Below the pieces are notes generated by a model. That model worked only from the letters and a program-made list of their open reading frames with translations. It was not told where the DNA came from and ran no database searches. From Paraphysomonas bandaiensis (taxonomy: Eukaryota > Protista > Chrysophyceae), in NCBI GenBank assembly GCA_965644295.1, contig CBFFRP010000296.1:248001-312000 (forward strand): a stretch of DNA of 64,000 bases, in the 5' to 3' direction. Made by a program: the position numbers and the translations under genes. Below are positions 9,191-64,000 of the stretch, piece after piece (the stretch's first letter is position 1; each line of letters starts with the position of its first letter).

Positions 9191-9250
9191 TTGTATTTGG
9201 TCTTGTAAATGTGAGCATTATTTTAGTTGTAATCCTCAGCAGCGATCCAC

Positions 9251-10000: not shown

Positions 10001-10169
10001 TGACCTCTTGTATTGTTGAAATTGCTGAACATTGTATTGACGTTCAAAGGATGTTTTGTTAAAGCTATTTAACAGCGTTATGCCTTTCAAATGAATCTAT
10101 GTGATACTAGTTAAAGTTATTTAACAGTGATATGTCTTTCTAATAACTACGTTACACGTTAAAGTTCTG

Positions 10170-11245: not shown

Positions 11246-11274
11246 CTAACGTGAGTCGTTATATATTATATATA

Positions 11275-11537: not shown

Positions 11538-12052
11538 CAGCAGTAGCTAAAAGTAGCGAATCGTACACACTGGCTGCTACTCTATCTGATGCGACTATTA
11601 TAATGTAGAGGAGTACCATGATTGGTTTATTAGCTATAAGTGATGTATATAATAATTCCATTTTCTATATCTTATGGTTGATATCTTATCTTCAAGAAAA
11701 CAATTTTTTACCCATGAAAGCAAACAGAGAGAACGCCGAACGAATTTTGCCATTTTCAGCAAGTTGAGTTTCCTTTATTCGTTTATGATGGTAGAGAAGT
11801 GTGCTTGTTCGAAGCTATCCTGACACACTCCATTAAAACATAAATAATTATATAAATGTCCATTGACTATATTTTTTCACAAAATCAGAATGTGACCCAC
11901 CACAGCCCCATTACGGGGAACAAACGGCCAAAACCAAAACTTTCGCACTTAACTTAAAAACTCCAACGTCGCCATATTTATTAGGAAAAAATAGAAAACC
12001 AGAGGTGTCTCTGAAGCTAAAGTTCCTTGATATAAAAATAAAATGGCATATA

Positions 12053-14152
12053 TTACGACGCAGCTTTGTCGTTTACAGTCACGGTCATATCAAGTAAGCG
12101 AAAGAGTCTATTCCGCGGCGCCAATTTTAGTTTCGTTAACATACTCCTTGATATTATCTCCAGTCCAACATCCATCAAGTCATCCGCACAATAAATTCCA
12201 AGATCATTATGCAGTTTGATCATACTTTTATATTCACCATCTAATATATACTTTTCATCCTGTAAAATTGACCACGCAGTTTCATACTTCTCCGGACTCA
12301 TTTTCATCAACCAGTCAGTGCGAGGTTTACCCATCGGAGTCGTTGTCAATGAGAGCTGCGTCTCGAGGTGGGGCAATACAGTGCTTTGAGGTCGATTAAT
12401 GGCGGCAGATATCCTGACAATTTCTTTTTTGTCCATTGAGTGAAATACGAATATTTCGTTGCCCTTTTCAGGTCGTGGAATGTAAACGTGCATAACACTC
12501 ACATGTGGGTCACTCTCAATATGCCACCAATCAGGTCGATCCTCTGGCAATTCGGATATAAAATTTACGACGAACACATTAGAAAGGTTAAGTGCCTTTT
12601 TGTAAACAATTGCCTGGTCATTATAATGTTCCCAGAGTTCATTCCGGGACGAATTAGCAACCAATTCATATCCGTATCTACCCCCATTATTTGAAACAAA
12701 AATACTCATTCTTTTTCGACACCCCGAACATGCACTTCTTGCCTCGCTTGTCACACGCCAATTGATTTTTACAGCCATCTGCAGCAAAATACCATACAGC
12801 TGAAAATGGTATGCAAATTCAAACGGAATTCCATCTTTTCCTACGCTCGTCTCTTGAAACAGCAAGTTTCTGTCAAGAAAAGGCAAGCATTGTATTAGCG
12901 TATTGAGCATATGGAGTTCCCGAGTGTGAGAACCAATTAGCGTAATCGATAATGATATTCCCTCGGGAATAGTGCGAATATGTGTCACAAAAGTCGAATA
13001 TAAAGCCAATCGTAGCAGGGGAGCTGCAAACCGTATCGTCTGTTCTGAGCCAGTATTCACGCGAACAATTATTCCTTCTGTTTCCATATAATTTACTGCT
13101 TTGAAGTGATCGACGGAGAGACTAGAAGGATCAGAGATCGATTCCCCACTCAGAAGCGTGCGTGTAATTTCCCTTGCTAGTTCGACGTGTTTCCCAACAC
13201 GCAACAAACTAGCCTTAACGCATTCAACTACCGATGACTGAGCCACCTCGCCATACACAAGACTGCCGCATATATGCGCCACCCAACCGCCAATTGTAAT
13301 AGAATTTAAGCCATTCCTCTGAACCCACTCATTGAGTATTCGACCTAGTAGTGACGTAAACCCTGGGTGGCCATGAGTGCGCCCATATATATCATCGCAG
13401 TATTCCCTCATATCTTTAGAAAGTTGGGCCCCATATTCGTCAAACATCATTCTTACATCTGCAAGTACAGGTTGCTCGAGGCGAATGCACTGTGCTATAT
13501 TGAATGATGAAGATGTATTGGTATTTTCCGGAAGCGCTAACTCTGTGATATGAAAAACACCAATGCCCAGAATTCCACTGATTGCGTACGGTTTACTCGC
13601 ATCACAAGCATTTACTGTCTTTAGCATGCGAAAAGTAGACAGAATTTCGTTACGTTTACTTGAAAGTGATAATATCATATCAAACTCATCCATTACAATT
13701 ATAACTCGGCTGTCGAAATTCGGTGTCTCGAATGCTTTCAAGAAACTGTCGCTTGTCGAAAAGGGTGTATTGATCTTCGCAGAACAAACTGCATGCATTC
13801 TAGCATACAGAGACTCCCAAAACGACGCTTCGTTGATTCCTTGCAATGACACGCTTATCGGTAGAAAGCCTCTGTCCAGTAACAACGATACGATCGGCGC
13901 AATCAAACTAGTTTTCCCTGCCTGACGATGAGCATGAAGCAGTATGTAGGACTCAGCTTCCAGTTTCTGAGCAATATCATCACAAACATCACTGCGGTTG
14001 ATCGCATAGTGCTCCGCCGCATCTATCGGGCCTCCAACATGAAAAGATTTGATTGGATGGCGTTTGAAGTTAGCGTTTGTTCGTTGCCGATTTTTTTTCT
14101 TCTGTTTCGGCGTTAATTTGAAGCTGTCGGTTGATTCCATATACATATACAT
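12053..14152 (-). CDS. P-loop NTPase plus restriction-endonuclease-like domain (Crinkler-like architecture) with a possible C-terminal SAM-like domain; true start uncertain
   Basis: 699-aa intronless ORF; Walker A HAHRQAGKTS, Walker B VIIVMDEFD, RTHGHPG; REase-like EFAYHFQLY..VTSE..RMSI..YELVA; C-terminal LGIYCADDL..LKLAPRNRLFRLL. Confidence 0.65.
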   Translation of the reverse strand: MYMYMESTDSFKLTPKQKKKNRQRTNANFKRHPIKSFHVGGPIDAAEHYAINRSDVCDDIAQKLEAESYILLHAHRQAGKTSLIAPIVSLLLDRGFLPISVSLQGINEASFWESLYARMHAVCSAKINTPFSTSDSFLKAFETPNFDSRVIIVMDEFDMILSLSSKRNEILSTFRMLKTVNACDASKPYAISGILGIGVFHITELALPENTNTSSSFNIAQCIRLEQPVLADVRMMFDEYGAQLSKDMREYCDDIYGRTHGHPGFTSLLGRILNEWVQRNGLNSITIGGWVAHICGSLVYGEVAQSSVVECVKASLLRVGKHVELAREITRTLLSGESISDPSSLSVDHFKAVNYMETEGIIVRVNTGSEQTIRFAAPLLRLALYSTFVTHIRTIPEGISLSITLIGSHTRELHMLNTLIQCLPFLDRNLLFQETSVGKDGIPFEFAYHFQLYGILLQMAVKINWRVTSEARSACSGCRKRMSIFVSNNGGRYGYELVANSSRNELWEHYNDQAIVYKKALNLSNVFVVNFISELPEDRPDWWHIESDPHVSVMHVYIPRPEKGNEIFVFHSMDKKEIVRISAAINRPQSTVLPHLETQLSLTTTPMGKPRTDWLMKMSPEKYETAWSILQDEKYILDGEYKSMIKLHNDLGIYCADDLMDVGLEIISRSMLTKLKLAPRNRLFRLLDMTVTVNDKAAS

Positions 14153-17727: not shown

Positions 17728-20036
17728 ATGCATCGCTGGAGATTCATCCGGCATAATGTGCTGTCAATACTCCCCCCTCCCTCCCGATACCCAGCTATAA
17801 GACGGTGTGCTTCTCACACACCCCAATTTCCCAATAATGACTACATAAACGATCTTAAGGCCGAATACACGAAGCCTTTACTTAACTTAAACGAGTTCCT
17901 TATAGAGCGACACCATCAGGACTCAACTGCCTTTCTTTTGGACAAAAACGGCAAGGTTGAGGAATTCACTTATGCGGATCTCGATGCATACGCTAACCAT
18001 TTAGCTTCTATACTACAACAAACTGGAGTCCAGACCGGCTCTCGAGTTGCTGTGTTGTTACCGAAGAGCTTTGAAGTTGTAGTGACCGCTCTGGCTGTAT
18101 GGAGACTTGGAGCGACTTATGTCCCTCTATTTACAGCCTTTGGATCGGAGGCTATACACGTGCGTATCAAAGATGCCGCCATTACTGTTATGATTACAGA
18201 TGAACTGAATCGACCCAAGCTAAATCATTTATCTTCTCTTGCTGGAGTTAACATCATGACAGTGTTTTCTTCGAGTAATACATCCAGAGAGGCCTTTGGT
18301 AGTGACGTACCATTCCCCACACAGTTAGAGTTACAACACGCAAGAGAATCAGTATCACTACGACCGCAGTGCGCAGCTGCAGTTGCTCCAGAAGACCCCA
18401 TAGTGATGCTATACACGAGTGGAACTACTGGTATACCTAAAGGTGATGCATGCCCTGTGCAGTATACATTGCGTATGATACATTGCCGTACACTGTATTG
18501 TATGGAGCACAGTATAACAGACCCATATAGGAGTACTGGTCCCAGCATTTGCTCTGGCATCCTTTCAGGTTTGTATATATGTATTTGTACATGGGAGGGT
18601 GTGACTATTGGATACTTTGTCATCTGTCCACGAATACATATGGATAAGTGTGAATATTGCTAGTAGGTGTATATGGAGCTTGGCCTTGGCCTACAATGTG
18701 ACGTTGGTAGTTATGTATCGAGTCGACCACCCTTCGTATGCACTACCAATCAACGGTATCTTTCCATGGCGGACCCTGCGTGGGCGTATGGACTGTACTA
18801 TAATCTCATTGGCCCACTTTTAATTGGAGTACCATTCACTTATCTCGCTGGGGGCTTCACTGCCCAGAGAGCTCTGCGTGCCTTACGAGAGCACCGCATT
18901 ACACATTTCGCCGCAGCTCCTTCTGCATATAGGGCGCTACGAGCATACAAACCCGATAATGATGATGACCTTGCAGAGATATGGGAAGAGTTAAAGCACC
19001 ACCTGGTAGCATGTTCTTCTGCAGGAGAACCACTCAATCCTGAAATAAATGAGTGGTTTTCTGGGTGTATGGGAGGGCGAGTAATTGGGGATCATTTTGG
19101 CCAGAGTGAAGTTGGTATGGTATGCAACTGGCATTGGGGTGATGCCCTGGTCGATTCCACATTGCTGGACACGCCAAAACCTTTGCCGTGGACTCTTCCG
19201 GGTAGCATGGGGCGCAGTATGAACGGAATTCGATGTGTCGTATTGGGTTCAGAAGATAGTCCTGATAGCGAATCGAAAACACTGAATACTTCTAGTTTAA
19301 CCGAACTTGACACAAATATTGTTGGGAATCTTGCTATTGACACACATAACAGCCCACTGATGTGGTTTCGTGGGTACTGGAACAATCCGACGAAGACATC
19401 AGCTTGTACGAGTCCCTGTGGTAGGTACTACCTGACTGGAGACAGTGCGTACAGGACAACTCGCATCTCTCCAGTTACTAAAGAAAGTGAAGATATATTT
19501 TGGTATTCAAGTCGAAATGACGATATAATTAAAACTTCAGGGTATAGAATAGGTCCTTTTGAAGTTGAAAGTTGTCTTTTGGGAGACGAAAGAGTCGTGG
19601 AGGTGGCTGTCACTGGAATTCCAGATCCACAGGATCTGCGAGGGGAGGTGCGCATTGTTGTATTGTTTTTTATTATCAGATGGTGTATTTGTGTCATTAT
19701 TGAAAATGGCCCTAAAATATTTGTGTGCACTTGATGCTGTGTATTGATTTCTTACCTCGATAGTATTAATATTGGTTTGATATTATGACAATGACGTGTT
19801 TGAGTCCTCCCTGTAATATCCTTTTCTGTCAGATCATTGCGGCGTTTATTGTGTTATGTCCTACCGCGTCACCTTCCGAATCTCTTTCCTCCCTGCTTCA
19901 GGAGATCGTCAGTAAAAGACTTGGAAAACACTGCTTTCCACGGAAAATATATTTCGTAGATTCTCTACCTAAGACTCCATCAGGAAAGATACAACGATAC
20001 TTGCTGCGAGAGCAAGTCAAAAGCGGCGTTCTATAA
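17728..20036 (+). CDS. Acyl-CoA synthetase (AMP-forming, AcsA-like) with a probable mitochondrial presequence; exons ~17728-18442, 18531-18568, 18667-19648, 19833-20036
   Basis: YTSGTTGIPKG, ADPAWAYGLY, SAGEPLNPE, FGQSE, YLTGD, RNDDIIKTSGYRIGPFEVES and LPKTPSGKIQR motifs. Confidence 0.92.
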
Positions 20037-33324: not shown

Positions 33325-34687
33325 ATACGATGCGTTGAGTTCCTTCTCAGAGCACTGTGGGTGTTGCTTTCTCTTCTTAAAGCTCCCACGTTTGTGTTGT
33401 ACTATCAGCAAGAGATCTGAGAGTCTCAATTCTATCAATGAACTCCTAAGATAGGCATCGTGCTATTGATACGTTATTATGTCTTGCAGGCAGGAGGTGA
33501 CAATTTCAATCAAGGGGGTAATTCAGGGATATGGATTCCAAACCGGCTTCGTTGATATTTTCTCTTAACTAGTAGAGTGAATAGTCGGTCACTGTATAGT
33601 AGGCCTATTCTAGGTATATGGGGATGAACGCTGTTGACGCATGGGTGCAGTAACTACTCCCTTGGCAAGACTCACGGTCGGAATTACTTTATGATGTCAT
33701 ACTGCTTGATTCCGTACATGTGTTGCAAGTGGTCAATGCGGAAGCAAATAGTTAGCTACCAGACATTTACTTGATGTGGGCTTGAAATTAGAGTGGTATG
33801 TGAGAGCATCTCTTACATTAAATTTCAGATATAGTGTTGTATAGTGTCTGTCTATAGTTGTACTTATTTCTTGTTCGCTACTGACGTGTGGAATGTTGGT
33901 ATGCAGTTATCAGGTGTACATTTGTACTTAAAATTAGACTTTATCGTTACCTGCTCATCAAAGTACGTTACGATACGAAAGCTATCTGATCCCACTCACC
34001 ACTCATAATGGTGCGAGTAGTCGTGTACTTTTGAATCATCAATAAAATATTGAAAATGAAAATATTCAATAAGAATATAATTATACAATATATAGAAGTA
34101 AACTTGACTTAGGGCTACGTCGGCTATCACATATTCAAATAATTTACACTCAAGATATGCTTTGGCTGTAAAATTGGCAATCAAAAAGTCAGACTGCTAT
34201 AGCGTCTATACTGTATTTTAGTTATACTAAATAGATTAGGGTTACGGCTGTATAAAATGATGATATTTGATCAATATATCATTCTGTTATGCAAGGTCTC
34301 AACGCCTATTGCTAAATAATTAGACATTCACTATCATTCTGTTAGTGCTTCTTATACCTATTCATCTACAAGGACAGCGCATAAAGTTTCTATTTTCAAT
34401 TTTCATTATATTTAGGATATCGTGCTACAGTTGTATATAACTTATGGCTGTATAAATAGTTCAGAGAAAGAAGCATATTAAAAAATATACAATTTATGAG
34501 AAGGAATACAGGGCTATATAAATATATGAATGTGATTGAGATATGTTATTTACAATAACATCAGGTAAATAATAAGTAACCAGCAGTTTGATGCTATAAA
34601 CCACTTGACATTGTTAAAAGTTACATACGATATTCAAAAATCACATTTCATTCAACTATAAATATGTATGCAGAACTCTAAATAGTG

Positions 34688-49340: not shown

Positions 49341-49610
49341 AACTCTGATATCCTACTTTATATCGCTACAAAAGTTGCTATGCGTCACCGTAAGTACCAC
49401 CACCATCGCTCTCTGTTCTTAAGGTGAACTACCCCGGATGCTTGATTGAATCAGGTAGCTCAAACCCCGGATGTCCTTGAGGTGGGTCCATTCCCGGATG
49501 CCTGTTTATTTGTGCAGGCCCAAAGACGTCTACACAAGTGACACTTATATTAGTGTGTTATTTGTGCCACACAAGCATTTGGCTATGAGTAGGCAGAGCA
49601 ATATCTGCCC
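49341..49610 (-). mobile_element. SINE-like ~270-bp repeat copy
   Basis: Aligns with 4605-4853 (ccggatgcctgtttatt, ccacacaagcatt.ggctatgagtaggcaga) and with 11275-11537. Confidence 0.8.
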
Positions 49611-50189
49611 CGGTACTCATCCCCCGCTCAATATGGAATGGATGTTAGCCCTTCGGGATCCATGCTCGTTCAGTCAGGGGGACGTCAGTCAGGTAAGGCT
49701 TTGGAGGATTGTGAGGGGTACATGATTCTGTATTATTGTTGTCGAGGCGTAGGCCTAGGTTCTAGATCATCATGAGAAGTTCGCAATTTGGACCTGGGGC
49801 GCAGAAATTCCTTAAGAAAGTTCATTTATGCACAGCACTCGAATAAGAAGATACCAGAGGTGGGGTTCCACATTTGCTATATATAATTGACAGCTATTTG
49901 CTTCTATCTAGAAGTCGAGGTAATACCAAAACCTCCTGGTTTTTGATGTAAAACCTGGTGAAATTTTTGATGATGGTTGGAAAGGGGAATAACTATGCAC
50001 AATAAGTAACTACGAAGATATAATAACACTATGAAAAGTATTATTTATAATATTTTTTACTAATTTCTTCCATAATACTTCGGTTTTACAGCAAAAAAAG
50101 TCACCGACTACACATATATATTACATACAGTTCACAAGTATGAGCTATACCCATCTCACATCTCACTAGATCCGTCAACTGTACCATCT

Positions 50190-52455
50190 ATGCTACATGA
50201 GCAAAGAGAGCAACAGGAACAGAGGGAAGTAATTGCAGTCTCCTTGTCACCGAGAGCTCGACGTCAACTACGGCAGATGAACCCCACGGACCGTCGACAA
50301 CTCAGGCTCCATATGTGCGACATGAGCAGAGTCTATCGCCTCACCCTCAGACCCTCAGCCCTTCGCACACAACAACATATCCCAAGTGATGGATACTGCG
50401 CATACAGCACACTCTATCATCTGCACATTCTTGCTTCAAGCAGGCGACACACTCGCTCCTGTCTGAAATTAGACCTCAAACAACGCAAGGACCGTCACAC
50501 GCTAGCATCTTTTATAAATACATTAGGCACCCAAGCGTTCGACACAATGCAACGGGAGTGCATGGCCCATCACACACTTCAGCCACTACGACATAAGTTG
50601 GATCACGCACAGGCCGCACTTTTAATACCTGCCAAAACAACATACACTACGGAGGACGACATAACTCACTGGCTCTCAGTGCGAGAGGTCCACCTTTTAG
50701 CCTCTACTATCAACCCCTGCACGACGTGGGCGCAAAATGGTAATTATCTCAGCATTGTAGGTATCCCTACTGACAAAGTAGCTTATAACATCGCATGGAA
50801 GGTGGAGGAACTTAGGAACGCTATTCGTGATAACTACTACCATGTCATACTACAAGATGCTCACTACTTCCTCTTAGACCCTGCCGGTCTTTCTACTGCC
50901 CTAGACAACGCCCTACTATCTCTTGAAAACACCTTGGCCACCAGTATACTCTCAACGTCTGACCCCATCGCTCCACCTACACTTCCCGCGGACTCAATCA
51001 CGAACAACAATAGGACATCAAAGACGACCAGCACCAGAACAACCTCGTCCAGCAGCACCAAGTTAGCACGAACAAATCGACAGATTCTGCAGGCTTCAAC
51101 CCCTGGAGCACTACCATCGCACAGGAAGATGCAGTTGAAACACGCCCAAACTGCGTTGACAAGTCGATGCCAGCCAACCCGGAAAGCCAAAAAGGTCGTA
51201 AATTACGATGAAAGTGACCAACCAACGAACCTTCACAACTCACACCAATCCACGACCACACGAACGATCAGACCAACTCCAGCACTTGATACCACCAGCT
51301 GGGACAAGGACTGGTCAAGAAAGTTCTACATTGCGTACGCCGATAACACTGCCAAAGGACTATCCCTTTATGCGAAGAACACATTCCCAGCAGACGTCAT
51401 CATTGCTGAGTACAAAGGCAAACGCTATCCACTAACAAAGCTGAGTCAGTCTGCAAGGCGTTCTGATTACATAGTTCAAGACAGTACTGGTACCTTCGCA
51501 ATAGATGGCTTTGACCAAGTCCGACAATGTGTAACATGCGAAGCTGGGTATATTAATGACCCCCTAGCCACAAACATGGCTAATGTCAAGTTTGTCACGA
51601 AAAATAAACGCCTCTATGTCCGTACAATACGTCCCATTGCTAAGGATGAAGAACTTCTCATCAACTACGGGCATCATTACTGGTGTGATCAACGCTGGCC
51701 ACTTGAGATATTAATCCAAGCCAGGGCTGCGTACGACAGCGACATAGGCGGTGCCAATAAAGCAGTATGGGACAGACTCCTTGCAGACAAGAGTGGAACT
51801 CCTACAGAGACCTCCAGCAGCATCCCCAAGGCTCCCTCGGGAGCAGCCATGGGACTCCGACTCTCCACATGGAACACAAATGGCAATCCGGCATCTCACA
51901 CAGGCAAAGTCCAAGCTATCATCCGACACTTTAAGCGGCAAAAATTGGACGTGCTCCTATTACAGGATGTCCGTCTAACAGAAACTCAGGCCAACTTCTT
52001 CACACGTATCATAGAAGATGCAATCCAGGGATCAAGAATATGCCTCTTCCTCAGCAAGCAGCCAAAACTGACTTCAAGAGACCCACTAATGGGGGGTACA
52101 GTAGTCATAATCAGCGAATACTGGAAGCGCCGTCTCGCCTTCACAAAGGCTGACTTTACGGGACTTGGTTTAGTGAGCCGACTAGAGTTCAAAACGTCGG
52201 TGGCGCACACCCTAGTACTAATAAGCGTCTATCTACCCCCGAAGCCATCCACGCCAGGCTCTTGCACATTATGGAGCAAATTGACCAAGCTAGGGAGAGC
52301 GTCCCGTGGTATCTGTACGGCTGACCCCTACAAGCTCCTATGCAACATCCTTACGAAATGGGTCACTAAAGCCAGAGCCAAGGACCATACTGTCATTGTC
52401 GCCGGCGACTTCAATGGCTCCATGGAGACAAATCCGAAAGGCAGAGACATACGAC
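50190..52455 (+). CDS. LINE ORF, 5' part: OTU-like protease, SET domain, N-terminal part of the APE endonuclease
   Basis: IPSDGYC..WLSVREVHLLA..AHY (OTU); KGLSLYA..IAEYKG..IDG..AGYIND..NVKF..IRPIAKDEELLINYGHHYW (SET); LSTWNTNG, LLLQD, SVYLPP and VAGDFNG (APE). Confidence 0.88.
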
Positions 52456-55400
52456 TGTGGGCTTGCATACATATGTGTATGTGTGCAAAGCAATACCCAA
52501 GTACAGAAGTACAAAATAATGATTATTATCGTATAATGAATCATGAATAATACTGTCTACAATATCAACGGCTAATAATACTGTCTACAATATCAACGGC
52601 TAATAATACTGTCTACAATATCAACGGCTATTGCTAATCCCAACAATCACATTCCCTACAGTTTGTATTCCTAACTACATGGTACACGTATACAATACAG
52701 TACTGTACTACTAATCATATAATACAGGACATGTACACGTATATATTCTATATGTAAGTGGATAGTCCTACACTACCTCCCCTTATAATTGATGTGTTAA
52801 TGTGTTATATTGACACTCAATTCTGTAAACTTTGTTATTAATCTTCTTCATCAGAAGAATAAACCACATTTCGAGGTAGTAAATTTCTTACATTTTCATC
52901 AGGATGTTGAGTTAGGAAATTTTGTAGAGCATACGTTTTTCTAACGTTAGCCCATGGTTCCCATGTAGGTTTTTCATACCCTATCCAATGTACTAGAAAT
53001 TTTATTTGACTTTTCGGACCTTTAGCTCGACCTTTTATTTTTGAAATATGGTCAATAGCATAAAAGTTTCCACCATCTTTACATGCCACTTGTAAGGGGT
53101 CAATAGTAGAGGGATCGTAATTAAATTCCCTTAATTTCTTTATATGATAGTCTTTATTACGTTTAGTAACAATATCTTGAAGAGTATATTTGTCTCCAAT
53201 AACATTGACTACTCGCATTGGACCTTTAAGATATGGTAATAACTTACTTGCCGGTCCAGGACGTAAAGCATTTTGTCTATGCTCAACTAACACATAAGAA
53301 TTTATTGGAAATTCTTTTGTTTGTATATTTGGTGCAGTTGCCATGTGGATTTCATCATGTTTGCGAAGATTTCGTCTTGCAACATCCATAATAGTGGACT
53401 GAACCTTTTGTATTCTATCTATCCAATGTGATAGCTTTTGTTCGTTCCCGTCCAAGTTCTCATTGTGTTCAATGAATAAACTCTTATCTAAATCTACTGC
53501 ATTCCCAAATAGAATACTAGCGGGAGTAACGCCGGTGCTTCTATGTTTAGAAGAATTCATAATTCTTTGTACTAAAGGTAGATACATTGACCAATTATTT
53601 AGTACATTTTTATCAAATATAATATTTCTTAAGTGCCTTAAAATTTCTTTATTAGCACGTTCCACTATAGCATTTTCTTCTTTAGAATACGCCATCGAAA
53701 ATGATTGATTACTTCCAACCATTTCTATCAATGATTTTGTTAAATCATCCACAAATGCTGGTCCAAGATCCGAATGAATCTCAATAGGTGCTCCATATCT
53801 ACCCAGGTGTTGAAGCAATCCCCTTTGCCGCCGCCATGGCAGTGAGATTCTTAGTAGGGATTAATTCTACCCACCTAGAAAAAGAATCGATAATCACTAA
53901 TATATTAGTGTATCCATCCTCATCTGGATGCAGACTCTGAATAAAATCCACTGCTATTCTTTGCATCGGGCCATATGTTGAGACAGTAAAGGGATGAGCA
54001 TTAATTATTGGTTTAATTCTACTCATCTTTTGACAACAAGGACAAGTTTTAATAAATTTTGTCACATGTGCCCCTTGCTTTGACCATTTATGACCATTGT
54101 CTCGTAATTTTTGTATTGTACGATCAATACCATGATGACCTGTAACATTGTTATGAAATCTTTTAATAATTTCCCATTCCTTGTTTGGAACTTTAATATC
54201 GGGAATTAGGGAAGCACATTTTGTTTCCATTTTAGATTCTAATGCACATAGTCTACTAAATGCATCAGCAACAACATTATCAGATCCTTTAATATCACAT
54301 AGATCATAATCATATGCTTGGAAACATTTCAACCATCGCTGAACTTTCTTATCCTTAGCGTAATCAGTTCTCAACTGAGTAATATTTTTATGATCTGTTT
54401 TGATCGTAAAGTATCTATACCTTAATAGGTAGTCCCATTTATCTAAGGCATAGTATATAGCATATCCTTCTTTCTGAGGTGTATCCCAATTCATCATTCT
54501 TTCATCGAATGTTTTACTGAGAAATCCTATTGGACGTTCTACACCATCTACTACTTGGTAGAGGTATGCTCCTATTCCATAATCAGATGCATCGGTCAAT
54601 AAATATATTGGTGACTCGTCATCAATGAAAAATAATGTTGGACATTCATGGATCATCAATTTGATCTTTTCAAATGCTTCATTGGCATCCTCTGTCCATT
54701 GTAGACGTTTACGTCTATGATAGTTGAGAAGCATTTTATTTAACGGTCTCACCACTAAGGAGTGGTTGTGCACGTGATCCCGAAAATAATTTGCCAATCC
54801 GAGGAAAGATTTTAGACCCTTCATAGTTTCAGGCTTTGGGAAATTTAATACACTATCCAGACGTTCTCTAGTAAAGTGTAACCCTTCCTCATTTAGAGTA
54901 TGTCCTACATATTGTACTTCGGACTCTCCTATTTTCACTTTCTCAGGATTAATGTAAACATTGTATTTCCTGAAGCGTTCTAGAACTTTAACGTAATTTT
55001 CAATTAGTTCATCTTCTGTAGAAGCATATATAATCAGGTCATCTAGATATAATTCACATATGAACATAATCAACCCGGCAAGCACAATTGTTGTTAATAC
55101 TCGTTGAAAGTATGATGGAGCACCACTCAAACCCATGGGTAGTCGGAGCCATTCGAATACTCCCCAGAAGGTTATAAATGCCGTCCACTTTCTCGAGTAC
55201 TCTGAAATTTTAGCCTGGTAATAACCAGATACTAAATCCAGAATTATGAAGTATTTGGGTTTCTTAGACCCAATACGTTCTAACATTTCTTTGATGTTAG
55301 GTATTGGCCAACGTTCCCTCTGTGTGTGCTTGTTTAGACCTTTATAGTCTACACAGAATCGCCATTTATCATTTGGTTTGGGAACTAATAATACCTGGCT

Positions 55401-58040
55401 ATAATAAGGAGCCGTACTTGGTTGTATTATTCCATGCTCCACAAATGTATCGATTTGCTTTTTACAAGCATACTGTCGTACTCGATCCATCTTTCGTGGC
55501 GGACCACAATGTTTTGGTTGTTCCCAAGCATCCCTATCTACCTCTAATTCAAAAGGTGGAACATCCATTGGCATATCCGACACTGTGGTTTTAAATCTAT
55601 CCTTATAGATTTCATGGATTTCTCTCACCCTCCTTTGTAAAGATTCGGGACCAGAGATTTTAGTTGGTAACGTAGTACCTTCTACTTTTTCCTGAGTATT
55701 TGTAACTATTTCTTCTGGGATTGACTCCAGATAGTTATCTCTAATCTCGCCTATATCTTCCTTTTCATATGCACTTATACGCATGGATGATATTGGAGGT
55801 GAATACATAGTACTAACCAAGCTATTACTTGTAAGTAAATTATTATTATAACTAAGGTGTTCCTTAGCTTGGCGCCTTAATGTTTCCATGTTATTATAAC
55901 ATGTGGCTCTCTCACTAATATGTTCCGAGAGAAGCTGAGTCTTCTCAGCATGGCCCGCGGCCGTAGCTAGCATTTTCCCTGCTAACTCTCTTTCCATAAA
56001 GTGAGATGGAAAATGATCAACTAATCTATATTTCTTGATAGTTTCTCTACCAATTATGATATCAAAGGTGCTATCTATTATCAAACATTGCAACTCAATA
56101 TCAAGAGTATTGTTATACTCATCAGTTAATCTTATAGTTATTATCATATATTGCTTGCTACTACAACAAGCATTATCAAGCGCACTACAAATTTTAATGT
56201 TACACTCGTGCAATGGAATATTATACCTAGCAACTAACATATCAGCAAGTTCTTGGTTAATGAAATTATTCCCAGTAGCCCCCGTGTCCAATAAGGCTTT
56301 AGCCCTTAGATTTTCCTTTACCTGTTGTACATTGACATCAGCTTTAGGACATACAAAGACATCGAGCATATCATTATTCATGTCAATAGCATTTATATAT
56401 AAACACTTAGGGCATGATAACTTACTTGTTTTCGATCTCGGAGGACCATCAGGATTCTCCACATAAGGGCAGGTACTCCAACCCATAGCCGCATATTTTT
56501 TGCCCTGTGTGGAATCTTTCCATGGCTTCTTTTCATGGTTAGCCCATGCACAGGTTTTGCGGGTGCAGTCACCTTTATGAAGATTACCGCATATCCAACA
56601 TGCTTCCTTAGTATCAGTTGTTGCTTTAGTACTTGAGGATGAGCTGGAGGATGAAGTTTTTGTAGTCTTAGACTTGTTAGACTTAGACGTTTCTTTGGAA
56701 TCCAATTTAGTTTCCATCCTCTTTACTTTTCTCACAGCTTGACTATAGTCATTGTTAAGCTCTCGCACCTTTCTACAGAATGCTCCGAAATCTTTTGGTG
56801 CAGATTGACCTTGGCCTATATCCGCTATAAATTTCTCTTTGGCATCCTTTCTGAAGGAATGTCCGCCCACAAGTTTAATGTTTTTCTTGAGGGTTTTGAC
56901 TATGGTATCCGAGGCTACCTCTGTGAGACTTGCCTCCGGAATGAGCTTATAAAGCTCATTCAGACGTCCATATTCTTTTAAGAATACTTTAGGAACATGA
57001 ATATCCACCTTAACCTTTGGTCCAATGATATTATCTATGAACCTAGGAAGAGGCTCCAATGTATCAGAGTATCGCTCCTCTTCCTCTAGAAAGGCTTGCT
57101 TTAACCACTGAATCAATTCCTCAGTAGTTACAATGTTTGGATCTAGCCAGTCCTCGTCAGACTCATCTCCAAAATCCTGCTGTCGCTGAAACTGAAGCAT
57201 ATCACGCACTGTTGGTGCCATGATTTCTGACCTTATGAATTTTGTCCCTTTAGGATCTCTTTTCGAGAGATTTTCACAAAATTCGATGATATCCTCATCT
57301 TGCACACTACCTAAGTAGGGAATAGAGTCGGTATTGATTACTTCATGTGGAGTGGATTCCGTCGCAATGACTTCATTCAAGTCAATGCGCTCACTCCTGT
57401 TGGGGTGCGGATCTCCACTCCTTTGCTTCTTTCTCTTTGGTTGAGAAGAAGAGAGCTCACGAAATGATACTCCACTCAATTCTCCTTCCGCCTCTACTGA
57501 TGTTTCAGTTTGAGGAGAAGATTGCATTTGAGATGATGTTGTTGCATCTCTTGCTCGTTTTCGAGAGGATTCTCTCTCTCTTTTCGTCTTTTTAGACGAA
57601 GAACCCGAAGCAGCTAACAATTCCTCTATTTGAGGAGCTGCTTTTATTTTGCTTCTCTTACTTTCCCCCATAATATTGTTATATCACAGAGATTGAGTAC
57701 TACTTATTAAGTAATATTACTGTGGGCTTGCATACATATGTGTATGTGTGCAAAGCAATACCCAAGTACAGAAGTACAAAATAATGATTATTATCGTATA
57801 ATGAATCATGAATAATACTGTCTACAATATCAACGGCTAATAATACTGTCTACAATATCAACGGCTAATAATACTGTCTACAATATCAACGGCTAATGCT
57901 AATCCCAACAACAATCACCTTCCCTACAGTTTGTATTCCTAACTACATGGTACACGTATACAATACAGTACTGTACTACTAATCATATAATACAGGACAT
58001 GTACACGTATATATTCTATATGTAAGTGGATAGTCCTACA
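52456..58040 (-). mobile_element. Ty3/gypsy chromovirus; LTRs 52456-52772 and 57721-58040; TSD CGAC
   Basis: TG...CA LTRs differ by 2 substitutions and a 3-bp indel; CGAC at 52452-52455 and 58041-58044; PPT GGGGAGGTAG on the minus strand next to 52772; each LTR has 3 x 28-bp repeats (52546-52629, 57811-57894). Confidence 0.97.
52838..57671 (-). CDS. Gypsy gag-pol (Zn knuckle, protease, RT, RNase H, integrase, chromodomain) with a single 1-nt frameshift at ~53820
   Basis: CWICGNLHKGDC, LLDTGA, WRFCVDYK, YLDD, TDASDYGIG, H..GHHG..CPCCQ, VDFI/SDLG/VERAN (DDE), GPMRV, and FLVHWIGYEKPTWEP (chromodomain). Confidence 0.95.
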
Positions 58041-58044
58041 CGAC

Positions 58045-61000
58045 CACTTGCCGACAAACTCCAACTGGCTGCACCACTCCATGAGCTTCTCCTACCCAGG
58101 AAAACATATCATACCTTCCACAGATTAGACAAAGGAATATCGCGGATCGATCATATTCTACACACGCCGTTACTTCCGAACATGTCTGTTACGGACACTG
58201 GCTGCCTTGACTCCCCCTCACTACTCGCAGCAGCCTTCGATCATCGACCGGTCTGGGTCGGTTTCACTGTACCAGTCAATCTTGACCCTCGACCACCTGA
58301 GTCGCACCTCCGAATCCCCCCCCGTCTCAATGTAAACCCGAAGGACTCCAAGGAAGTACAGGCATACACCGCAAGACTCCTCCAACTTCATGCACAACTA
58401 CCACATTTAGACAACGGATCGTCTGCCATACTCCCTCCTGAGGTGGCAGCCAACAGACTAGCGGCCATCCATCACATAACCCTCCAGGCTTCGCTTGAAG
58501 CGAAGCGTCCTGCATGTACTTATAGCACACGACTACACGAACGTTGTCAGCGCAAACGCTCAAAGTTCAAGAATGGCTTTTCCCCGGAAATGAGAGTAAT
58601 ACAAGAAGGAATGATCATGGTTTTGCGGATTATCCAAAAGATGTTCAATTCTGCCGGATACAAACGGCTTGGATGGCGCGGCCCCCCGGCAACCACCCCC
58701 ACCCACGAAATCATCACTGCATGGTTCATCCGATGGGACTCCTATCTCAGGAGTTCTCAGGGTCACATCAAAGGCATATCAGACATCAACTTCTGGTGCA
58801 GCCATCGCAACGCGGACCCACGAGTAATCCTGGGTTGGAACGAAAAGCAAGCCACCAAGAAAAACCTTCTCCGAATTGCCTTGCGACTGAGAGGACTTCT
58901 TCATGGAAGAGCCAGGACAGAAATGCGGACTAGACTCACGGCTCGCACCAATCAGATGGAGGCACTGCTACAGCAGAAAAGACTTCAAGCAATTCTTCAG
59001 AAAATTGGTCTCAAGGTCAAAACACCACTCCGACTTACCACGGTGAAAACAACTGACGGACACATCCTCACAACACCGCAAGACATTCATGAAGGCATTA
59101 ATGCGCACTTCCGTGAACATCATGCCAAACCTCCTGGACTTGACCCTGTAGCACAACAGCTCCAGGATGACCCTACATGGTGGAAATCCCTTCTTGATCC
59201 GGGCTCAGCGACATGCCAGGAACCACTCCACCCCCGCTCGAAAATCCCTCTTCCCCTGCAACTGGGGTTACGACGGGCCCTTTGTACCAAGACCACTCCG
59301 GCCATGGCAGCCACACTCAAATCTACTCTTGCAAAAGACATCACCCAGGATGAATTCTACTGCACACTTCACTCTCTCTCCTTCAACCGCGCGCCTGGAC
59401 CCTCAATGGTCTCCTCCAACATGGTCAAATCCTGGCCACCGGTAGTTCAGCGAGAGGCTTACATCCTCACCAGATCTCTCTGGAAACATAAACATGTGCC
59501 CATTTGGTGGAGAGACAGGGTAATGTCTCCCATTCTCAAGAAACCAGGAGAATCCTCCCTCAATAATCTCCGACCGATTGGTCTGCTTGAAGTCAGTAGG
59601 AAAATATTAACAAGGATAATCACTCATAGAATTCTTACCGTATGGGAGGAACAGAAAGTTTTGCATCCGTCCCAGCATGGTTATCGCTGGAGGAACGGGA
59701 CGGACACAGCGATACTAAGGGTACTCGCGGCTGCAGAAGAAGCAAGACGAAAAGGCGACCAGCATATATGTACACTCTGGGACTTCAAGAAGGCCTTCGA
59801 CTCAATTGCGCCTAACCTCATGCGTCTCGCGTGGGCACGACTGGGCGTTCCGGACGATGTAGTTGACTGGTTTGGCAACTTAGATGCCGGCGGTCTAACA
59901 TTTCCCTGGACACCATTCATGGCAAACAACATAGAGCCACGTTCTCTCCTTGACCTCCTGTCCGCAGACGGCCACTTCATTGCACTATTCAGTCTGGGTT
60001 TCGAAGCCGAAAGGGGTATCACCCAAGGGGGCACAGAATCCACATGCGCCTGGGTGGCACTCTACGACATCCTTCTCACGTGGCTGGACATTGAACTGTC
60101 AACAACGAGTCCAACGTTACCAACTATTCAACTCACGACTCCGACTACCGGCGAAATAAAGATCTCCTTCGCGGATGATCTTAACACAATAGCTAAATCC
60201 ATACACGCTGCCCAACTCATTGCCCAACAAATATCTGCGTTCTGCGTACTTTCGGGAATGGAACTCTCTATCCCCAAAGTAGTTTGCACAGTGTTTCCGA
60301 TCCTACAAGATTCCAACAAGTCCTCCGACCCCATTGGCTACATCATTCTCTACGACTGGTCGTGGCGTCCACACCCAGTCCCTATCCAAACATCACTAGA
60401 GTCGATACATTACCTCGGAGCAGACCTTCCTCTCACAATCACAGACAAGGCCTCCCATGATTGGTGTCTAAAATACCTGAAAGTCGTGACCACACACCTA
60501 GGGATTAAACAGGCCTCAGCCGGCTGTAAAGTCATGGTTATCGAGACCCAAATCATACCGACTTTGCTCTATAGAGCCACCAAAGCTTCATGGCCGCTAC
60601 ACTGGTACAGAGAAATTGACGCTGCTTGCGCAACCCTCTACAGAAAGGCCCTCAGTCTAGGCCCTGGATACCCCACGGAACTGATCTACCTCTCACTCAA
60701 GCACAACGGATTAGGTATGAAACGTTTCTCAGACTCGGCGCAGGAGCAAAAATGGGGATCTCTACAGCGCGCAATAACCCTCGGGGGAGAAGCAGGTCAA
60801 GCAGCACATTTTCTACTCACTCAGACAACAGAGCCACAGCCCCAATACCACCACTATGTTCTCAGCCTCAGGGAATGGGGAACGGAATTGGGCCTTACCC
60901 TTCAGCAACCTGAGCCCCCCGAACCACAGGATGAACACATGCTGACCAATCTAAAACAAGAACTCGGCCTTAATAGCGTCCAACCAGATACTTTCAAGGC

Positions 61001-62738
61001 AATCTTCACAGATGGATCATACACAGCCAGTGCGCTCTCCACGCGTCGCCTCACTCATGTCAATCCGCGAACACGATGGACACACCGAGGAGGTGCAGCG
61101 GTCGTCTACTTACCCCCAGAAAATGCCTGGGAAGATGGTACAACCATAATACTACGACTAGATACACCCTTTCGTGATGTGCCAGGTTTGGACTCATACG
61201 CATATGAACTCATAGGCACAGCCATGGGGCTTATACTCTCAACACGCATTCCCGAACACATAAGAAGCCACACAGACTGTCAGGCAGTGTGCACCCGTAC
61301 TGAGGAAGCACTCTCCACAAGACGCAGAGCTCTCGGTCACCGTGCAAAAGGGGTACTACTCGAAAGCATCGCGGCCAGTAGAGATTGCAAACGACAGGTG
61401 ACCTGGGTGAGGTCCCATCCCGAACGACGTACCACAGATGAAACGGAGTGGACGTTTGAGGACAAGGGCATCTATATTGCGGACGCAGTCGCGGGTGAAG
61501 ACTGGCATGAAGTCGATCGCATCCTTGGAAAAAATAACTACACTGTCTGTACAATTGCGATTGACAGTGCCATTGAACGCTTACTAACCGCTGGATTATG
61601 GCACTGGCGTTTGCACAGTACAAGACGGCCATACTACTCTAGCCCACTCCTTACTGATTTCCAAGATCTCTGCGACCTAAGGACACTTGAGAACTACACT
61701 TCAACCAGAGATCAACGCTACGGAAACAATCCTGATCGAGCGCCTGGCTACTGGACCAATAGCGGAGTACACCTCCCGCGCAAACTAGCTCAAGCGGATG
61801 GCAGTGCATCCAAAGACAAACTCAGCTCAAATCTACGCCAAAGAATTCTCAACACGGCACTGACATGGGACAAATCTTTCTGCATAGGGAGGAACCGGGC
61901 CAAAACCAAACAGGGGCTTGACCTGACCAAAGCCGCATGCTCTGACTGCGGGTTTCGACTAGATTCCCTAAAACATATGTGCCTCGACTGCACACATGAA
62001 TCCATCACCCAAATAAGGGAAACTGCATTTCAATCGCATAAAAATGTGCTACACGAAATACAGAGAACTCAGACCTTACCCAACTGGATCACATCTGCAC
62101 TACGGAGACTCTCCAGCAGAGCCTGGAATCCCTCCATCCCACAGGTCGAGAGATACTGGACTGGAACCATCACAGCAGCCCAACTGGAAACGGTCTTCGG
62201 AGATGACATACACAACCACCTGACGGCTCACAGTCTACGGAACCTAGAAACAGTGGTTATTAATCTCCTGCAACCGCTTTACACTGCAGCGAAGCTTATG
62301 TTACAGGATCGCGGTTGTCGCTATATCACCATGTCCAAAAGGCCGCCCAGGCTACTCCCGAGACCCCGTCCGAAACGCAGTCAGTCAAGACAACGTCCGA
62401 GAGTCCTTCGACTACTAGGGGTCCAACGAAGACCCCCCACAGCGTATCCGACTCCAGACACACGTGCACACCTCACAGGTCCTACCCGACAGAGCACTGG
62501 ACTGCCCAGACCTCCACAACGCCGACGGCTTCGACAACTCTATCTACACCCGCGGCCCCACAGGAGCACAGTAACACATACTACAAACCCAACTCCTCCT
62601 CCCAACAATCCCCACCACTCCCAACCCACACATCTGGAACTAGGTGCACTCAGGACCCTAATTCAGAATGCTGAGCCCCCTCCAAAACCAATGGAGACCC
62701 ATCCCAAAGGGAGACCCCCAGATCAAAAGCGCCGGTGA
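58045..62738 (+). CDS. LINE ORF, 3' part: APE C-terminus, reverse transcriptase, RNase H, CCHC finger, Arg/Pro-rich tail
   Basis: SRIDHI and FDHRPV (APE); APGP, LRPIGLL, QHGYR, DFKKAFDSI, GITQG, FADD and YLG (RT); FTDGS, YELIG, TDCQAV, WVRSH and ADAVA (RNase H); CSDC..DSLKHMCLDC. Confidence 0.93.
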
Positions 62739-62926
62739 GTCCACGGACACACGATAAAGGCGAATTTCATATCACACAAAAAGAACGGAAGTGGTTGCAC
62801 CTTGGTGCTTGCGGCGACGCACAAGCAGCTTTCGTAGCGTTAAATAGTAGGATAAAAGAGTTTGTATTGATTAGTTACGGGTAGTGGTCTAACTAGTATG
62901 ACTAGCATTCTTCTAGCCACTAATTG

Positions 62927-62971
62927 ATGCAAGGTCTCAACGCCTATTGCTAAATAATCAGACATTCACTA
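62927..62971 (+). repeat. 45-bp dispersed repeat, second copy at 34289-34333
   Basis: atgcaaggtctcaacgcctattgctaaataatYagacattcacta is present at both loci. Confidence 0.85.
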
Positions 62972-63109
62972 CTTCACTAGATCCTGATGTGCCAGTGGAG
63001 AACGAGAAGTAGTTACGATTCTTAGTCTATTACTTCACTAACTTAGTAATTAAGGGAGTACTACACTACATATAACTTCTATCAGCGGTATTATCTACTT
63101 AGGTATTAA

Positions 63110-63300
63110 TGAGCCATTGTAATTGCCGGGGCATTTTTGAAAAATGCCATTATAATTGTCGGGAACTGGACTACCAACGGGCCATTAATGGTTACCAGGC
63201 CTTGATTGGCGCTACCATTAATGGTAATTTATGACTATTATCTATTATAATTTTGCGGGGAACTTTCACCAATGGGCCACTAACGGTTGCCAGGCCCTGG
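63110..63300. repeat. Internally repetitive/palindromic dispersed repeat related to ~5020-5085
   Basis: tgccattataattgtcgggaactg matches the reverse complement of cagttcccggcaactataatggca at ~5035; ccattaatggttaccaggcc-like motifs recur. Confidence 0.6.
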
Positions 63301-64000
63301 CTCAAACCTTGAAAGGACTGGGCGCTGTTTTGCTCCAAATATGTCCCTTCATCTTCAGCATCATTCGTCAGACCAAATTAATTCAACCAAATTGACTAGA
63401 TCCAATAATAATACCCAGGCAAAATAGGGATAAAAACTACTAGTATGTATCGAGTATAAGAGTTGTATACAGTATACAGAATTATAAAAGTAGATGCAAC
63501 AATGATGTCAGAAATTAATGGTTTCGGCTCTAATAGTCAAGTTCGAGGATTTATCTTTGCCCTATCGATTGGGCACCCAATGTGAAGAACTCGAGAAGTG
63601 TGCATTACAAGACGCTATATATTCCAAAGTGTATCACAAATCAGCGTGGGAACACCAATGGTGGTTTGTCTATAATAACAGAGAGCACCAACAAAAAAAC
63701 TACTTTGGTCGGAGAAGTTGTCGTTGCGTTGGCTGTCATCACAGCACACTGCAACTATAAATGTCTTCTCGCGCCAAATTGTTTAACGGACGTGACGTGA
63801 ACTATTATAACTCTGTTAGCATAGTACGGCTACAAACACTACACTAATTAATGTGTAAAGTACACCGTTTTCACGTCATCTTGACCAAACTTTTCACCAC
63901 ACGCAGGACATTTTCGGTTCCTACTGCGGAGATTCTCATCAATGCATTCCTTGCAAAACATATGAAAACACCGAGTAATTGCCACTTGTTTAAATCTATC

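What the first reader, a model, noticed from the sequence alone, without database searches (positions are those of the whole stretch)
50190..62738. LINE retrotransposon whose polyprotein carries an OTU-like protease and a SET methyltransferase domain
Seen: the 786-aa and 1570-aa ORFs are two halves of one gene. Deleting the gypsy element plus one CGAC copy joins ...GRDIR|PLADKLQ... in frame. This restores a stop-free 2319-aa protein in the order OTU - linker - SET - APE - RT - RNase H - CCHC, with the APE motifs split across the insertion. Established: APE-RT-RNase H LINEs are common, and protease cargo is known in some non-LTR clades (Ulp1 in NeSL, Josephin-like in Dualen/RandI). I do not know of a LINE with both OTU and SET fused to APE-RT, but I cannot search to confirm novelty. 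Inference: the element may bring its own deubiquitinase and lysine methyltransferase to the insertion site, to counter or shape host silencing. The intact frame suggests the fusion was under selection until the gypsy insertion.
Basis: partly seen in the sequence, partly recalled or inferred. Interest (0 to 1): 0.95.

Follow-up and report, generated by a model that had tools for sequence, protein, structure and literature searches.

The report
Broken LINE copy carrying SET domain
This is a young, head-truncated copy of a jumping gene (a LINE) from a marine microbial eukaryote, later split by a second jumping gene. Its giant protein carries a lysine-methyltransferase (SET) domain and a probable OTU-type protease ahead of the usual cutting and copying enzymes, a combination I found described in no paper I could search.

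Summary
Removing the gypsy element (52456-58040) and one CGAC copy joins the two ORFs in frame. Eighteen natural copies elsewhere in the genome, and RNA-library contigs, carry exactly that uninterrupted junction.

- **Domains:** The order is confirmed. SET, APE and RT are found by Pfam. RNase H is supported by predicted fold and by its D-E-D-H-D residues. The CCHC knuckle is supported by motif.
- **OTU:** This is only "OTU-like, probable". Pfam finds nothing. The fold matches are weak but consistent, and the Cys and His boxes are invariant.
- **Correction:** The 2319-aa protein is not the whole gene. This copy is 5'-truncated at about 50172, with an 11-bp target duplication. Full-length copies continue at least 500 codons upstream (open frame about 3021 aa). 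The copy was therefore already incomplete before the gypsy insertion.
- **Family:** SET and the OTU-like domain are kept in three own-genome lineages (37-100% identity) with constraint similar to APE and RT. Diverged metagenome relatives also keep SET. Two of them place Pfam-grade OTU, SET and Ulp1 after the RT. All SET-bearing elements form one well-supported RT clade.

Biochemical function is untested. The scan has already reported this family from other pieces of the same genome. I could not check Repbase or Dfam.

The parts
50163..50173 (+). Left copy of the LINE target-site duplication TCACTAGAT(CC). The last two bases could equally be element sequence.
   Evidence: The same 11-mer occurs at 62974-62984. 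Homology to other copies starts at about 50170-50172. RNA-library contigs diverge from the window before 50172.
50172..52455 (+). LINE piece A, 5'-truncated. It has 6 element codons, then the internal Met at 50190, then 755 codons up to the break.
   Evidence: 99.8-99.96% nt identity to at least 12 other copies. Those copies continue upstream with an open frame of at least 500 aa.
50229..50939 (+). OTU-like cysteine-protease module (aa 14-250). The Cys box IPSDGYCAY has Cys70 at 50397-50399. The His box AHYFLL has His225 at 50862-50864.
   Evidence: Both boxes are invariant in lineages down to 37% identity. AF2 model: pLDDT 69. Nearly all of the top 50 Foldseek hits are OTU proteases, but with E >= 0.02. 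VIA-align Z 5.0-5.4 over 135-145 residues. Top Atlas hit is Otubain. No Pfam hit.
50940..51299 (+). Fast-evolving Ser/Thr/Pro-rich linker that ends in a conserved RCQPxRKAK..NY patch.
   Evidence: Alignment A1. dN 0.65, against about 0.2 in the domains.
51300..51794 (+). SET domain. The Pfam core is aa 390-494 (51357-51671). A conserved helical extension follows it. Motifs: KGLSLYA, YINDP (in place of NHS), EELLINYGHHYW.
   Evidence: Pfam SET E 1.7e-9, 38.5 bits against a cut-off of 22.4. Weak matches to MLL3/4 and to the PBCV-1 vSET in the PDB. Conserved signature across 10 relatives.
51867..52454 (+). APE endonuclease, N-terminal part.
   Evidence: Pfam Exo_endo_phos aa 560-743. In the intact copy L031 the same domain runs 560-797, across the break.
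52452..52455 (.). CGAC, left copy of the gypsy target-site duplication.
52456..58040 (-). Ty3/gypsy chromovirus-type LTR retrotransposon. LTRs at 52456-52772 and 57721-58040. pol runs in two overlapping frames, 57671-53799 and 53818-52838.
   Evidence: Pfam RVT_1, RT_RNaseH, Integrase_H2C2, partial rve and a weak Chromo hit. LTR pair. Absent from 18 other copies of the LINE.
58041..58044 (.). CGAC, right copy of the gypsy target-site duplication.
58045..62973 (+). LINE piece B. It is in frame from 58047 (1563 codons), with the stop at 62736-62738 and a 3' UTR at 62739-62973. It ends ...CATTCACTACT with no poly(A).
   Evidence: 99.92% nt identity to L032. The 3' boundary is shared by at least 40 copies.
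58047..58271 (+). APE endonuclease, C-terminal part, including the FDHRP motif.
59559..60440 (+). Reverse transcriptase core.
   Evidence: Pfam RVT_1 E 4e-15. The best PDB sequence match is human LINE-1 ORF2p, E 9e-10, followed by R2.
60993..61496 (+). RNase H domain. Catalytic candidates in piece B: D989, E1054, D1077, H1124, D1146.
   Evidence: These residues are invariant in alignment A3. AF2 pTM 0.71. Top Foldseek hits are RNase H domains, E 5.7e-5, probability 1.00. No Pfam or PDB sequence hit.
61938..61991 (+). CCHC zinc knuckle, CX2CX8HX4C.
   Evidence: Motif at piece B residues 1298-1315. It aligns to the same motif in P0039, a relative at 26% identity.
62974..62984 (+). Right copy of the LINE target-site duplication.

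Best explanation
The stretch is one insertion of a young, multi-copy, APE-type non-LTR retrotransposon (LINE) of a marine microbial eukaryote. It arrived by target-primed reverse transcription. It was cut short at its 5' end, so it lacks at least 500 N-terminal codons and any promoter, and it made an 11-bp target duplication. A chromovirus-type gypsy element later landed inside its endonuclease domain in the opposite orientation. The family encodes a single giant polyprotein of about 3000 aa. The part present here reads OTU-like cysteine-protease module, linker, non-canonical SET domain, APE, RT, RNase H, CCHC knuckle. Shown: the anatomy, the mobility hallmarks, the domain identities (OTU-like only as probable), and retention of SET and the OTU-like module under purifying constraint. 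Also shown: they are kept across a deep LINE clade whose other members carry bona fide OTU, SET and Ulp1 domains in a different order. Inferred: APE nicks the target, RT copies the RNA and RNase H removes the template. Inferred: the OTU-like modules cut the giant polyprotein and/or remove ubiquitin-like tags. Inferred: the SET domain, tethered about 30 residues ahead of the nuclease, methylates a lysine on a chromatin protein or another factor at the integration site, to the element's benefit.
For: - Junctions and the natural empty site. RNA-library contigs with the uninterrupted join.
- 5' truncation and target duplication. A second insertion of only 43 bp with a 12-bp duplication lies at 34290-34332.
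- Copy number and youth.
- Domains: Pfam SET, APE, RT; RNase H fold; CCHC; OTU-like.
- Constraint: between lineages at 62% identity, dN is 0.24 for the OTU-like module and 0.24 for SET, against 0.17 for APE, 0.19 for RT and 0.65 for the linker. dS is saturated. Whole-ORF dN/dS is 0.19-0.21 between young subfamilies.
- Relatives: P0008/L043 and L044 have SET, then APE, then RT. P0027 and P0039 have RNase H, APE, RT, OTU, SET, Ulp1.
- All SET-bearing elements form one RT clade with 100/100 support.
Against: - No biochemical evidence exists for any domain.
- Pfam OTU does not match. Fold scores (Z about 5, TM under 0.5) are in the range where chance arrangements occur, and only one of five AF2 models was confident.
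- The SET domain lacks the canonical NH(S/C) motif (it reads ND) and has a GxS variant of the GxG motif, so catalysis is not assured.
- The young-subfamily dN/dS for SET alone (0.46-0.83) rests on only 8 substitutions.
- RNA-library contigs cannot exclude DNA carry-over.
Confidence: 0.8

Rival explanations
1. The SET module is a catalytically dead or non-enzymatic domain. It may be kept as a binding or targeting module, for example to dock on histone tails or nucleosomes and guide the endonuclease, rather than as a methyltransferase.
For: The canonical NHS/C motif is replaced by IND in every member. The first Gly-rich motif reads GLS in this lineage. The Pfam PR-domain model also matches, though below its cut-off.
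Against: The catalytic-type Tyr in the EELxxxYG..YW motif and several cofactor-pocket positions are invariant across relatives at about 30% identity, including stand-alone proteins. Constraint equals that of APE and RT. From my own knowledge, active PR/SET enzymes also lack NH.
Confidence: 0.25
2. The N-terminal module is not an OTU protease. It would be a lineage-specific domain of another function, whose Cys and His are conserved for other reasons.
For: No Pfam hit. An exhaustive profile search of 1.84 billion proteins found only same-species fragments for this part. Z about 5 is tied with unrelated helical hits.
Against: OTU proteases are the only hits that cover the whole module, 123-145 residues. 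Nearly all of the top 50 Foldseek hits are OTU proteases. hhalign pairs its Cys box with the DGNC box of a Pfam-grade OTU in relative P0039. BLASTP pairs the His boxes, and the OTU-then-SET order is collinear.
Confidence: 0.25
3. This is a one-off chimera: a host SET or OTU gene fused to this LINE copy by transduction, mis-assembly or read-through.
For: None found.
Against: At least 22 copies carry the whole N-terminal part at 97% identity or more. Three further lineages at 63%, 43% and 37% keep it. Independent metagenome contigs also keep SET ahead of APE and RT.
Confidence: 0.02
4. The architecture is already catalogued, for example in Repbase or Dfam, and is therefore not new.
For: I could not search those libraries. 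Giant LINEs of protists are poorly covered in papers.
Against: Six full-text searches of about 8.4 million papers and preprints gave no retrotransposon with a SET domain. Two reviews of accessory domains do not list it.
Confidence: 0.3

Closest known systems
RNase H-bearing APE LINEs of the I/R1/LOA type (nearest named hits, e.g. 'R1DM-type' proteins P0013-P0020)
   Same: APE, then RT, then RNase H, then a C-terminal CCHC knuckle. Target-primed insertion with target duplications and 5' truncation.
   Different: RT similarity is only about 30% over a fifth of the query. The SET-bearing elements form a separate clade on a long stem. They have one giant ORF with an OTU-like module and SET ahead of APE, and no poly(A) tail.
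Metagenome elements P0039 (3532 aa) and P0027 (3923 aa)
   Same: Same RT clade (RT 26% identical, E 1e-62). They have APE, RNase H, the same CCHC knuckle, the same SET subfamily with its C-terminal helix, and an OTU domain next to SET.
   Different: In P0039 the order is RNase H, APE, RT, then OTU, SET, Ulp1. In P0027 the last three run SET, OTU, Ulp1. Their OTU domain is recognised by Pfam, and they add a Ulp1 (C48) protease.
Protease-carrying non-LTR elements (NeSL/Utopia with Ulp1, Dualen/RandI).
   Same: A cysteine protease of the ubiquitin-like-tag world sits inside a non-LTR polyprotein.
   Different: By the abstract of PMC4640811 the Utopia lineage belongs to the elements that use a restriction-like endonuclease. 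None is reported with a SET domain.
Retrotransposons that captured cytosine DNA methyltransferases (PMC5890265)
   Same: A retroelement carrying an epigenetic 'writer' enzyme, in protist or algal lineages.
   Different: There the enzyme is a DNA C5-methyltransferase. Here it is a protein-lysine (SET) domain, in a LINE.
PBCV-1 vSET (PDB 1N3J), a minimal viral SET enzyme
   Same: A small SET core without pre- or post-SET zinc clusters, encoded by a genetic parasite. The C-terminal EE(I/L)xIxYGxxYW motif is alike.
   Different: vSET is a stand-alone 119-aa protein. Similarity is weak (E 0.017). The cofactor motif here reads IND.

Membership tests
APE-type non-LTR retrotransposon (LINE) | APE-like endonuclease N-terminal to a LINE-type RT in one ORF | tested here: met
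   Pfam Exo_endo_phos and RVT_1. The best PDB match of the RT is LINE-1 ORF2p.
APE-type non-LTR retrotransposon (LINE) | Target-site duplication, variable 5' truncation, fixed 3' end, no LTRs, many copies | tested here: met
   11-bp duplication. 5' ends differ among copies. A 43-bp copy has a 12-bp duplication. The 3' end is shared by at least 40 copies.
SET-domain lysine methyltransferase (PF00856) | Match to the family profile above the curated cut-off | tested here: met
   38.5 bits against 22.4, E 1.7e-9, full profile 1-105. The same holds in three lineages and in relatives.
SET-domain lysine methyltransferase (PF00856) | Canonical cofactor motif NH(S/C)xxPN | tested here: not met
   It reads YINDPLATN. 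The N is invariant, but D (E in one relative, L044) replaces H in all 10 aligned relatives.
SET-domain lysine methyltransferase (PF00856) | Catalytic Tyr in the ELxxxY motif | tested here: met
   EELLINYGHHYW, with Tyr invariant in all 10 aligned sequences.
SET-domain lysine methyltransferase (PF00856) | Methyl transfer to lysine | not testable with these tools
   Needs an enzyme assay.
OTU cysteine protease (PF02338) | Match to the family profile | tested here: not met
   No hit even at E 10, in four lineages.
OTU cysteine protease (PF02338) | OTU fold | tested here: inconclusive
   Model pLDDT 69. OTU proteases dominate the Foldseek list but with E >= 0.02. Z 5.0-5.4 with 135-145 residues aligned. 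Otubain is the top Atlas hit, TM 0.31/0.48.
OTU cysteine protease (PF02338) | Catalytic Cys box (D-G-x-C) and His box | tested here: met
   (D/N)GYC and AH(Y/F) are invariant. The Cys box aligns to the DGNC of a Pfam-grade OTU, and the His boxes align as well.
RNase H type 1 | RNase H fold with D-E-D-(H)-D residues | tested here: met
   Top Foldseek hits are RNase H domains, E 5.7e-5, probability 1.00. The residues are invariant in A3. Pfam itself does not match.
Named LINE clades (I, R1, LOA, Tad1, L1, Dualen, Ambal and others) | RT groups inside the clade in a tree with reference sequences | not testable with these tools
   No reference set was on hand. Against the nearest named hits, the element falls outside them in a separate clade with 100/100 support.
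Ty3/gypsy chromovirus (the inserted element) | LTR pair, 4-bp duplication, RT-RNase H-integrase order, chromodomain | tested here: met
   The chromodomain match is weak (E 0.004).

The most novel reading that the evidence does not exclude
A deep clade of marine-protist LINEs carries its own chromatin-type toolkit: a SET lysine methyltransferase with OTU and/or Ulp1 proteases. The toolkit has been shuffled between the N- and C-terminal sides of the APE-RT core. The SET domain is an active enzyme that marks histones or other chromatin proteins at the site being nicked. That would make it the first retrotransposon-encoded histone-type methyltransferase, a protein-level counterpart of the DNA methyltransferases captured by other retrotransposons.
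Probability: 0.3. Interest if true: 0.9.

Novelty: new variant of a known kind. Interest (0 to 1): 0.7.

Why it matters
Transposons are usually seen as targets of chromatin silencing. An element family that keeps a SET domain and ubiquitin-family proteases under selection, tethered to its nuclease, suggests the element may itself write or erase protein marks where it lands. That can be tested directly with recombinant domains. It would extend the known capture of DNA methyltransferases by retrotransposons to histone-type enzymes. The movable OTU/SET/Ulp1 block within one RT clade also gives a natural case of domain shuffling in LINEs. This particular copy is a dead fragment. Its value is as a clean, dated example: a LINE insertion followed by a gypsy insertion.

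Tried and rejected
- **Word-based protein search** of the N-terminal 850 residues of a natural long copy: no hit.
- **OTU-like part:** Pfam at E 10 and a PDB sequence search gave nothing useful. The one PDB hit was a 32-residue low-complexity match to a lectin.
- **RNase H and C-terminal part:** PDB sequence and profile searches gave nothing. The fold search then settled RNase H.
- **Upstream modules:** the 500 upstream residues of full-length copies have no Pfam family and no significant similarity to the OTU-like module. Only weak His-box-like repeats appear. I therefore neither confirm nor reject the extra OTU modules claimed in earlier notes.
- **Host identification:** a p25-alpha gene from the window found nothing, and run names are coded. 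The host stays 'marine microbial eukaryote'.
- **3' UTR:** the fold is not better than shuffles (z -1.7). Rfam has no match at 49500-64000.
- **One-off fusion and assembly artefact:** rejected.
- All whole-gene work used natural uninterrupted copies by reference.
- **Limit reached:** after no more genome letters could be fetched, so the first ~200 codons and the 5' UTR of the full-length element were not read.
Full report
**What is in the sequence**

Two long plus-strand ORFs (50190-52550 and 58026-62738) flank two minus-strand ORFs. The minus-strand ORFs carry the RT, RNase H, integrase zinc-finger and partial integrase-core domains, plus a weak chromodomain match, of a Ty3/gypsy element.

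Direct repeats of about 320 bp bound that element. Read base by base, the LTRs are 52456-52772 and 57721-58040. They begin TG and end CA, and are flanked by CGAC on both sides. They differ by 2 mismatches and one 3-nt gap.

The plus-strand frame before 52455 and after 58045 is the same. The break falls inside a codon, between ...GRDIR and LADKLQ....

**The join, checked without building it**

Instead I looked for natural uninterrupted copies.

- The window's genome (62.5 Mb, 669 contigs) holds at least 22 places with the complete 755-residue first piece at 97-100% identity.
- In 18 fetched copies, the 20 nt ending at 52455 are followed at once by the 20 nt of 58045-58064.
- Natural intact ORFs (L031, 2316 aa; L032; L033) align to piece A up to residue 755 and to piece B from residue 757.
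- Contigs from a culture run (labelled RNA only as a guess) and a poly(A) metatranscriptome run also continue from 52455 into the 58045 sequence.

The gypsy element plus one CGAC is therefore a later insertion into a previously continuous gene.

**Correction: the copy is 5'-truncated**

Homology to other copies starts at about 50170-50172. In those copies the sequence upstream of that point is conserved, not flank. Their reading frame stays open for at least 500 further codons. One locus has a 3021-aa open frame.

RNA-library contigs likewise leave the window at 50172 and run into that upstream element sequence. The 11-mer TCACTAGATCC stands at 50163-50173 and again at 62974-62984, directly after the shared 3' end ...CATTCACTACT.

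So the LINE insertion spans about 50172-62973 (7.2 kb without the gypsy). It has a 9-11-bp target duplication, no poly(A) and a 235-nt 3' UTR. It lacks roughly the first quarter of the coding region.

The ATG at 50190 is an internal methionine. The 2319 aa are a fragment of a polyprotein of about 3000 aa. This copy was incomplete on arrival. Its clean frame reflects its youth: 99.8-99.96% nt identity to other copies.

A second insertion of the same family at 34290-34332 is only 43 bp long and has a 12-bp duplication. This shows the same insertion mechanism at work.

**Domains**

- **SET, APE, RT:** Pfam finds SET (aa 390-494, 38.5 bits against a cut-off of 22.4), Exo_endo_phos (from aa 560) and RVT_1. 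In intact copies the APE match runs across the break. The RT's best solved relatives are LINE-1 ORF2p, then R2.
- **RNase H:** Pfam and PDB sequence searches missed it. An alignment with relatives at 27-38% identity keeps D, E, D, H, D in the expected order. The AF2 model (pTM 0.71) hits RNase H domains first in Foldseek (E 5.7e-5, probability 1.00).
- **CCHC:** A CX2CX8HX4C knuckle follows. It aligns with the same motif in a relative at 26% identity.

**The OTU-like module**

Pfam does not recognise it, in any of four lineages. An exhaustive profile search of 1.84 billion proteins found only same-species fragments for this part.

The following evidence speaks for an OTU fold:

- The boxes (D/N)GYC (Cys70) and AH(Y/F) (His225) are invariant down to 37% identity.
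- An AF2 model of moderate quality was obtained (pLDDT 69; only one of five models was good).
- Nearly all of its first 50 Foldseek matches are OTU deubiquitinases, though with E >= 0.02.
- VIA-align gives Z 5.0-5.4 over 135-145 residues, covering nearly whole viral and cellular OTU domains.
- In an unbiased scan of 48,161 chains, OTU proteins are the only hits spanning the whole module. Their Z is tied with short helical matches.
- Otubain is the first ESM Atlas structure hit.
- hhalign pairs the Cys box with the DGNC box of a Pfam-grade OTU in relative P0039. BLASTP pairs the His boxes.

I rate 'OTU-like protease fold' at about 0.75.

**The SET domain**

It is non-canonical. It reads KGLSLYA for the Gly-rich motif and YINDP where most SET enzymes have NHS. 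The EELLINYGHHYW motif, with its invariant Tyr, resembles that of the viral vSET and MLL enzymes.

Ten relatives at about 30% identity share this signature and a helical extension after the core. They include stand-alone metagenome proteins. This is a distinct, conserved SET subfamily, not a decaying fragment.

**Is it part of the element?**

Yes.

- Own-genome lineages at 62-71% and 37-43% protein identity (L035, L038) keep the OTU-like module, SET, APE and RT in the same order.
- Between lineages, dS is saturated. dN is 0.24 for the OTU-like module and 0.24 for SET, close to APE (0.17) and RT (0.19), and far below the linker (0.65).
- Between young subfamilies the whole ORF has dN/dS 0.19-0.21.
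- Metagenome contigs from other sources, with proteins only 32-39% identical, again have SET before APE and RT.

**A wider clade with a movable toolkit**

The nearest large relatives of the SET part are two giant metagenome proteins, P0027 and P0039. Both begin with RNase H and RT and carry Pfam-significant OTU, SET and Ulp1 domains after the RT, with OTU before SET in P0039 and after it in P0027. BLASTP against the window finds an APE-like stretch ahead of the RT in P0039 (P0027 was not compared).

The RT of P0039 is 26% identical to the window's (E 1e-62), and P0039 has the same CCHC knuckle. In P0039, OTU then SET is collinear with the window's N-terminal block.

In an RT tree, all SET-bearing elements form one clade (100/100) on a long stem. 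They stand apart from the nearest named hits, which are R1/I-like elements with RNase H. Branching inside the clade is unresolved, so one acquisition followed by shuffling is plausible but not shown.

**Expression and habitat**

Many marine and seawater DNA runs hold the stretch, as do two poly(A) metatranscriptome runs. Contigs from those runs cover parts of the OTU-like, SET and APE regions at 99% identity or more. Contigs cannot exclude DNA carry-over.

The host could not be named. A host-gene search found nothing, and run names are coded.

**Novelty**

Six full-text searches and two reviews gave no retrotransposon with a SET domain. The nearest concept is the capture of DNA methyltransferases by retrotransposons (PMC5890265). 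Repbase and Dfam could not be searched.

Earlier follow-ups of this scan reported the same family from other pieces of this genome. I treated them as leads only.

**Verdict**

It is wrong in treating 2319 aa as the whole protein, and in reading selection from this copy's intact frame. The family is a new variant of a known kind. Its biochemical function remains inference.

Noticed in passing
window 34278-34344: A 43-bp 3'-terminal fragment of the same LINE (34290-34332) flanked by a perfect 12-bp duplication, ATCATTCTGTTA. It is an extreme 5'-truncated insertion.
   Followed up: yes
window 62779-62971; also 5307-5375 and 4609-4649; genome C668:79019-79213, C143:106670-106858: Short dispersed sequences share only the LINE's 3' tail (71-91% identity).
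   Followed up: partly
window 52838-57671 (minus strand): The gypsy pol is read in two overlapping frames that change inside the integrase core (53799-53818). This copy may carry a frameshift there.
   Followed up: no
window 52546-52629 and 57811-57894: Each LTR holds three tandem copies of a 28-nt unit.
   Followed up: no
L007:3766-5265 (minus strand), L036, L037 upstream parts: The N-terminal extension of full-length copies, absent from the window, has no Pfam family. It repeats His-box-like motifs (DHFFL, HGFHIL, HYFLL) and, in one lineage, a GRGFC box. These are possible extra, degenerate OTU-like modules.
   Followed up: partly
L046 (ENA ERZ19571717), 144-14026: A relative with a 1094-aa first ORF abutting a 3532-aa ORF that carries RNase H, APE, RT, OTU, SET and Ulp1. 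It is a giant LINE of about 14 kb.
   Followed up: partly
window 17728-19734: An AMP-binding (acyl-CoA-synthetase-like) gene is read as two ORFs in the same frame, separated by TAG TAG at 18661-18666. This could be a short intron, a pseudogene or a sequencing error.
   Followed up: no
window 7158-10000: Many overlapping ORFs on both strands and a strong GC skew (0.49). This is probably a low-complexity or repeat region.
   Followed up: no
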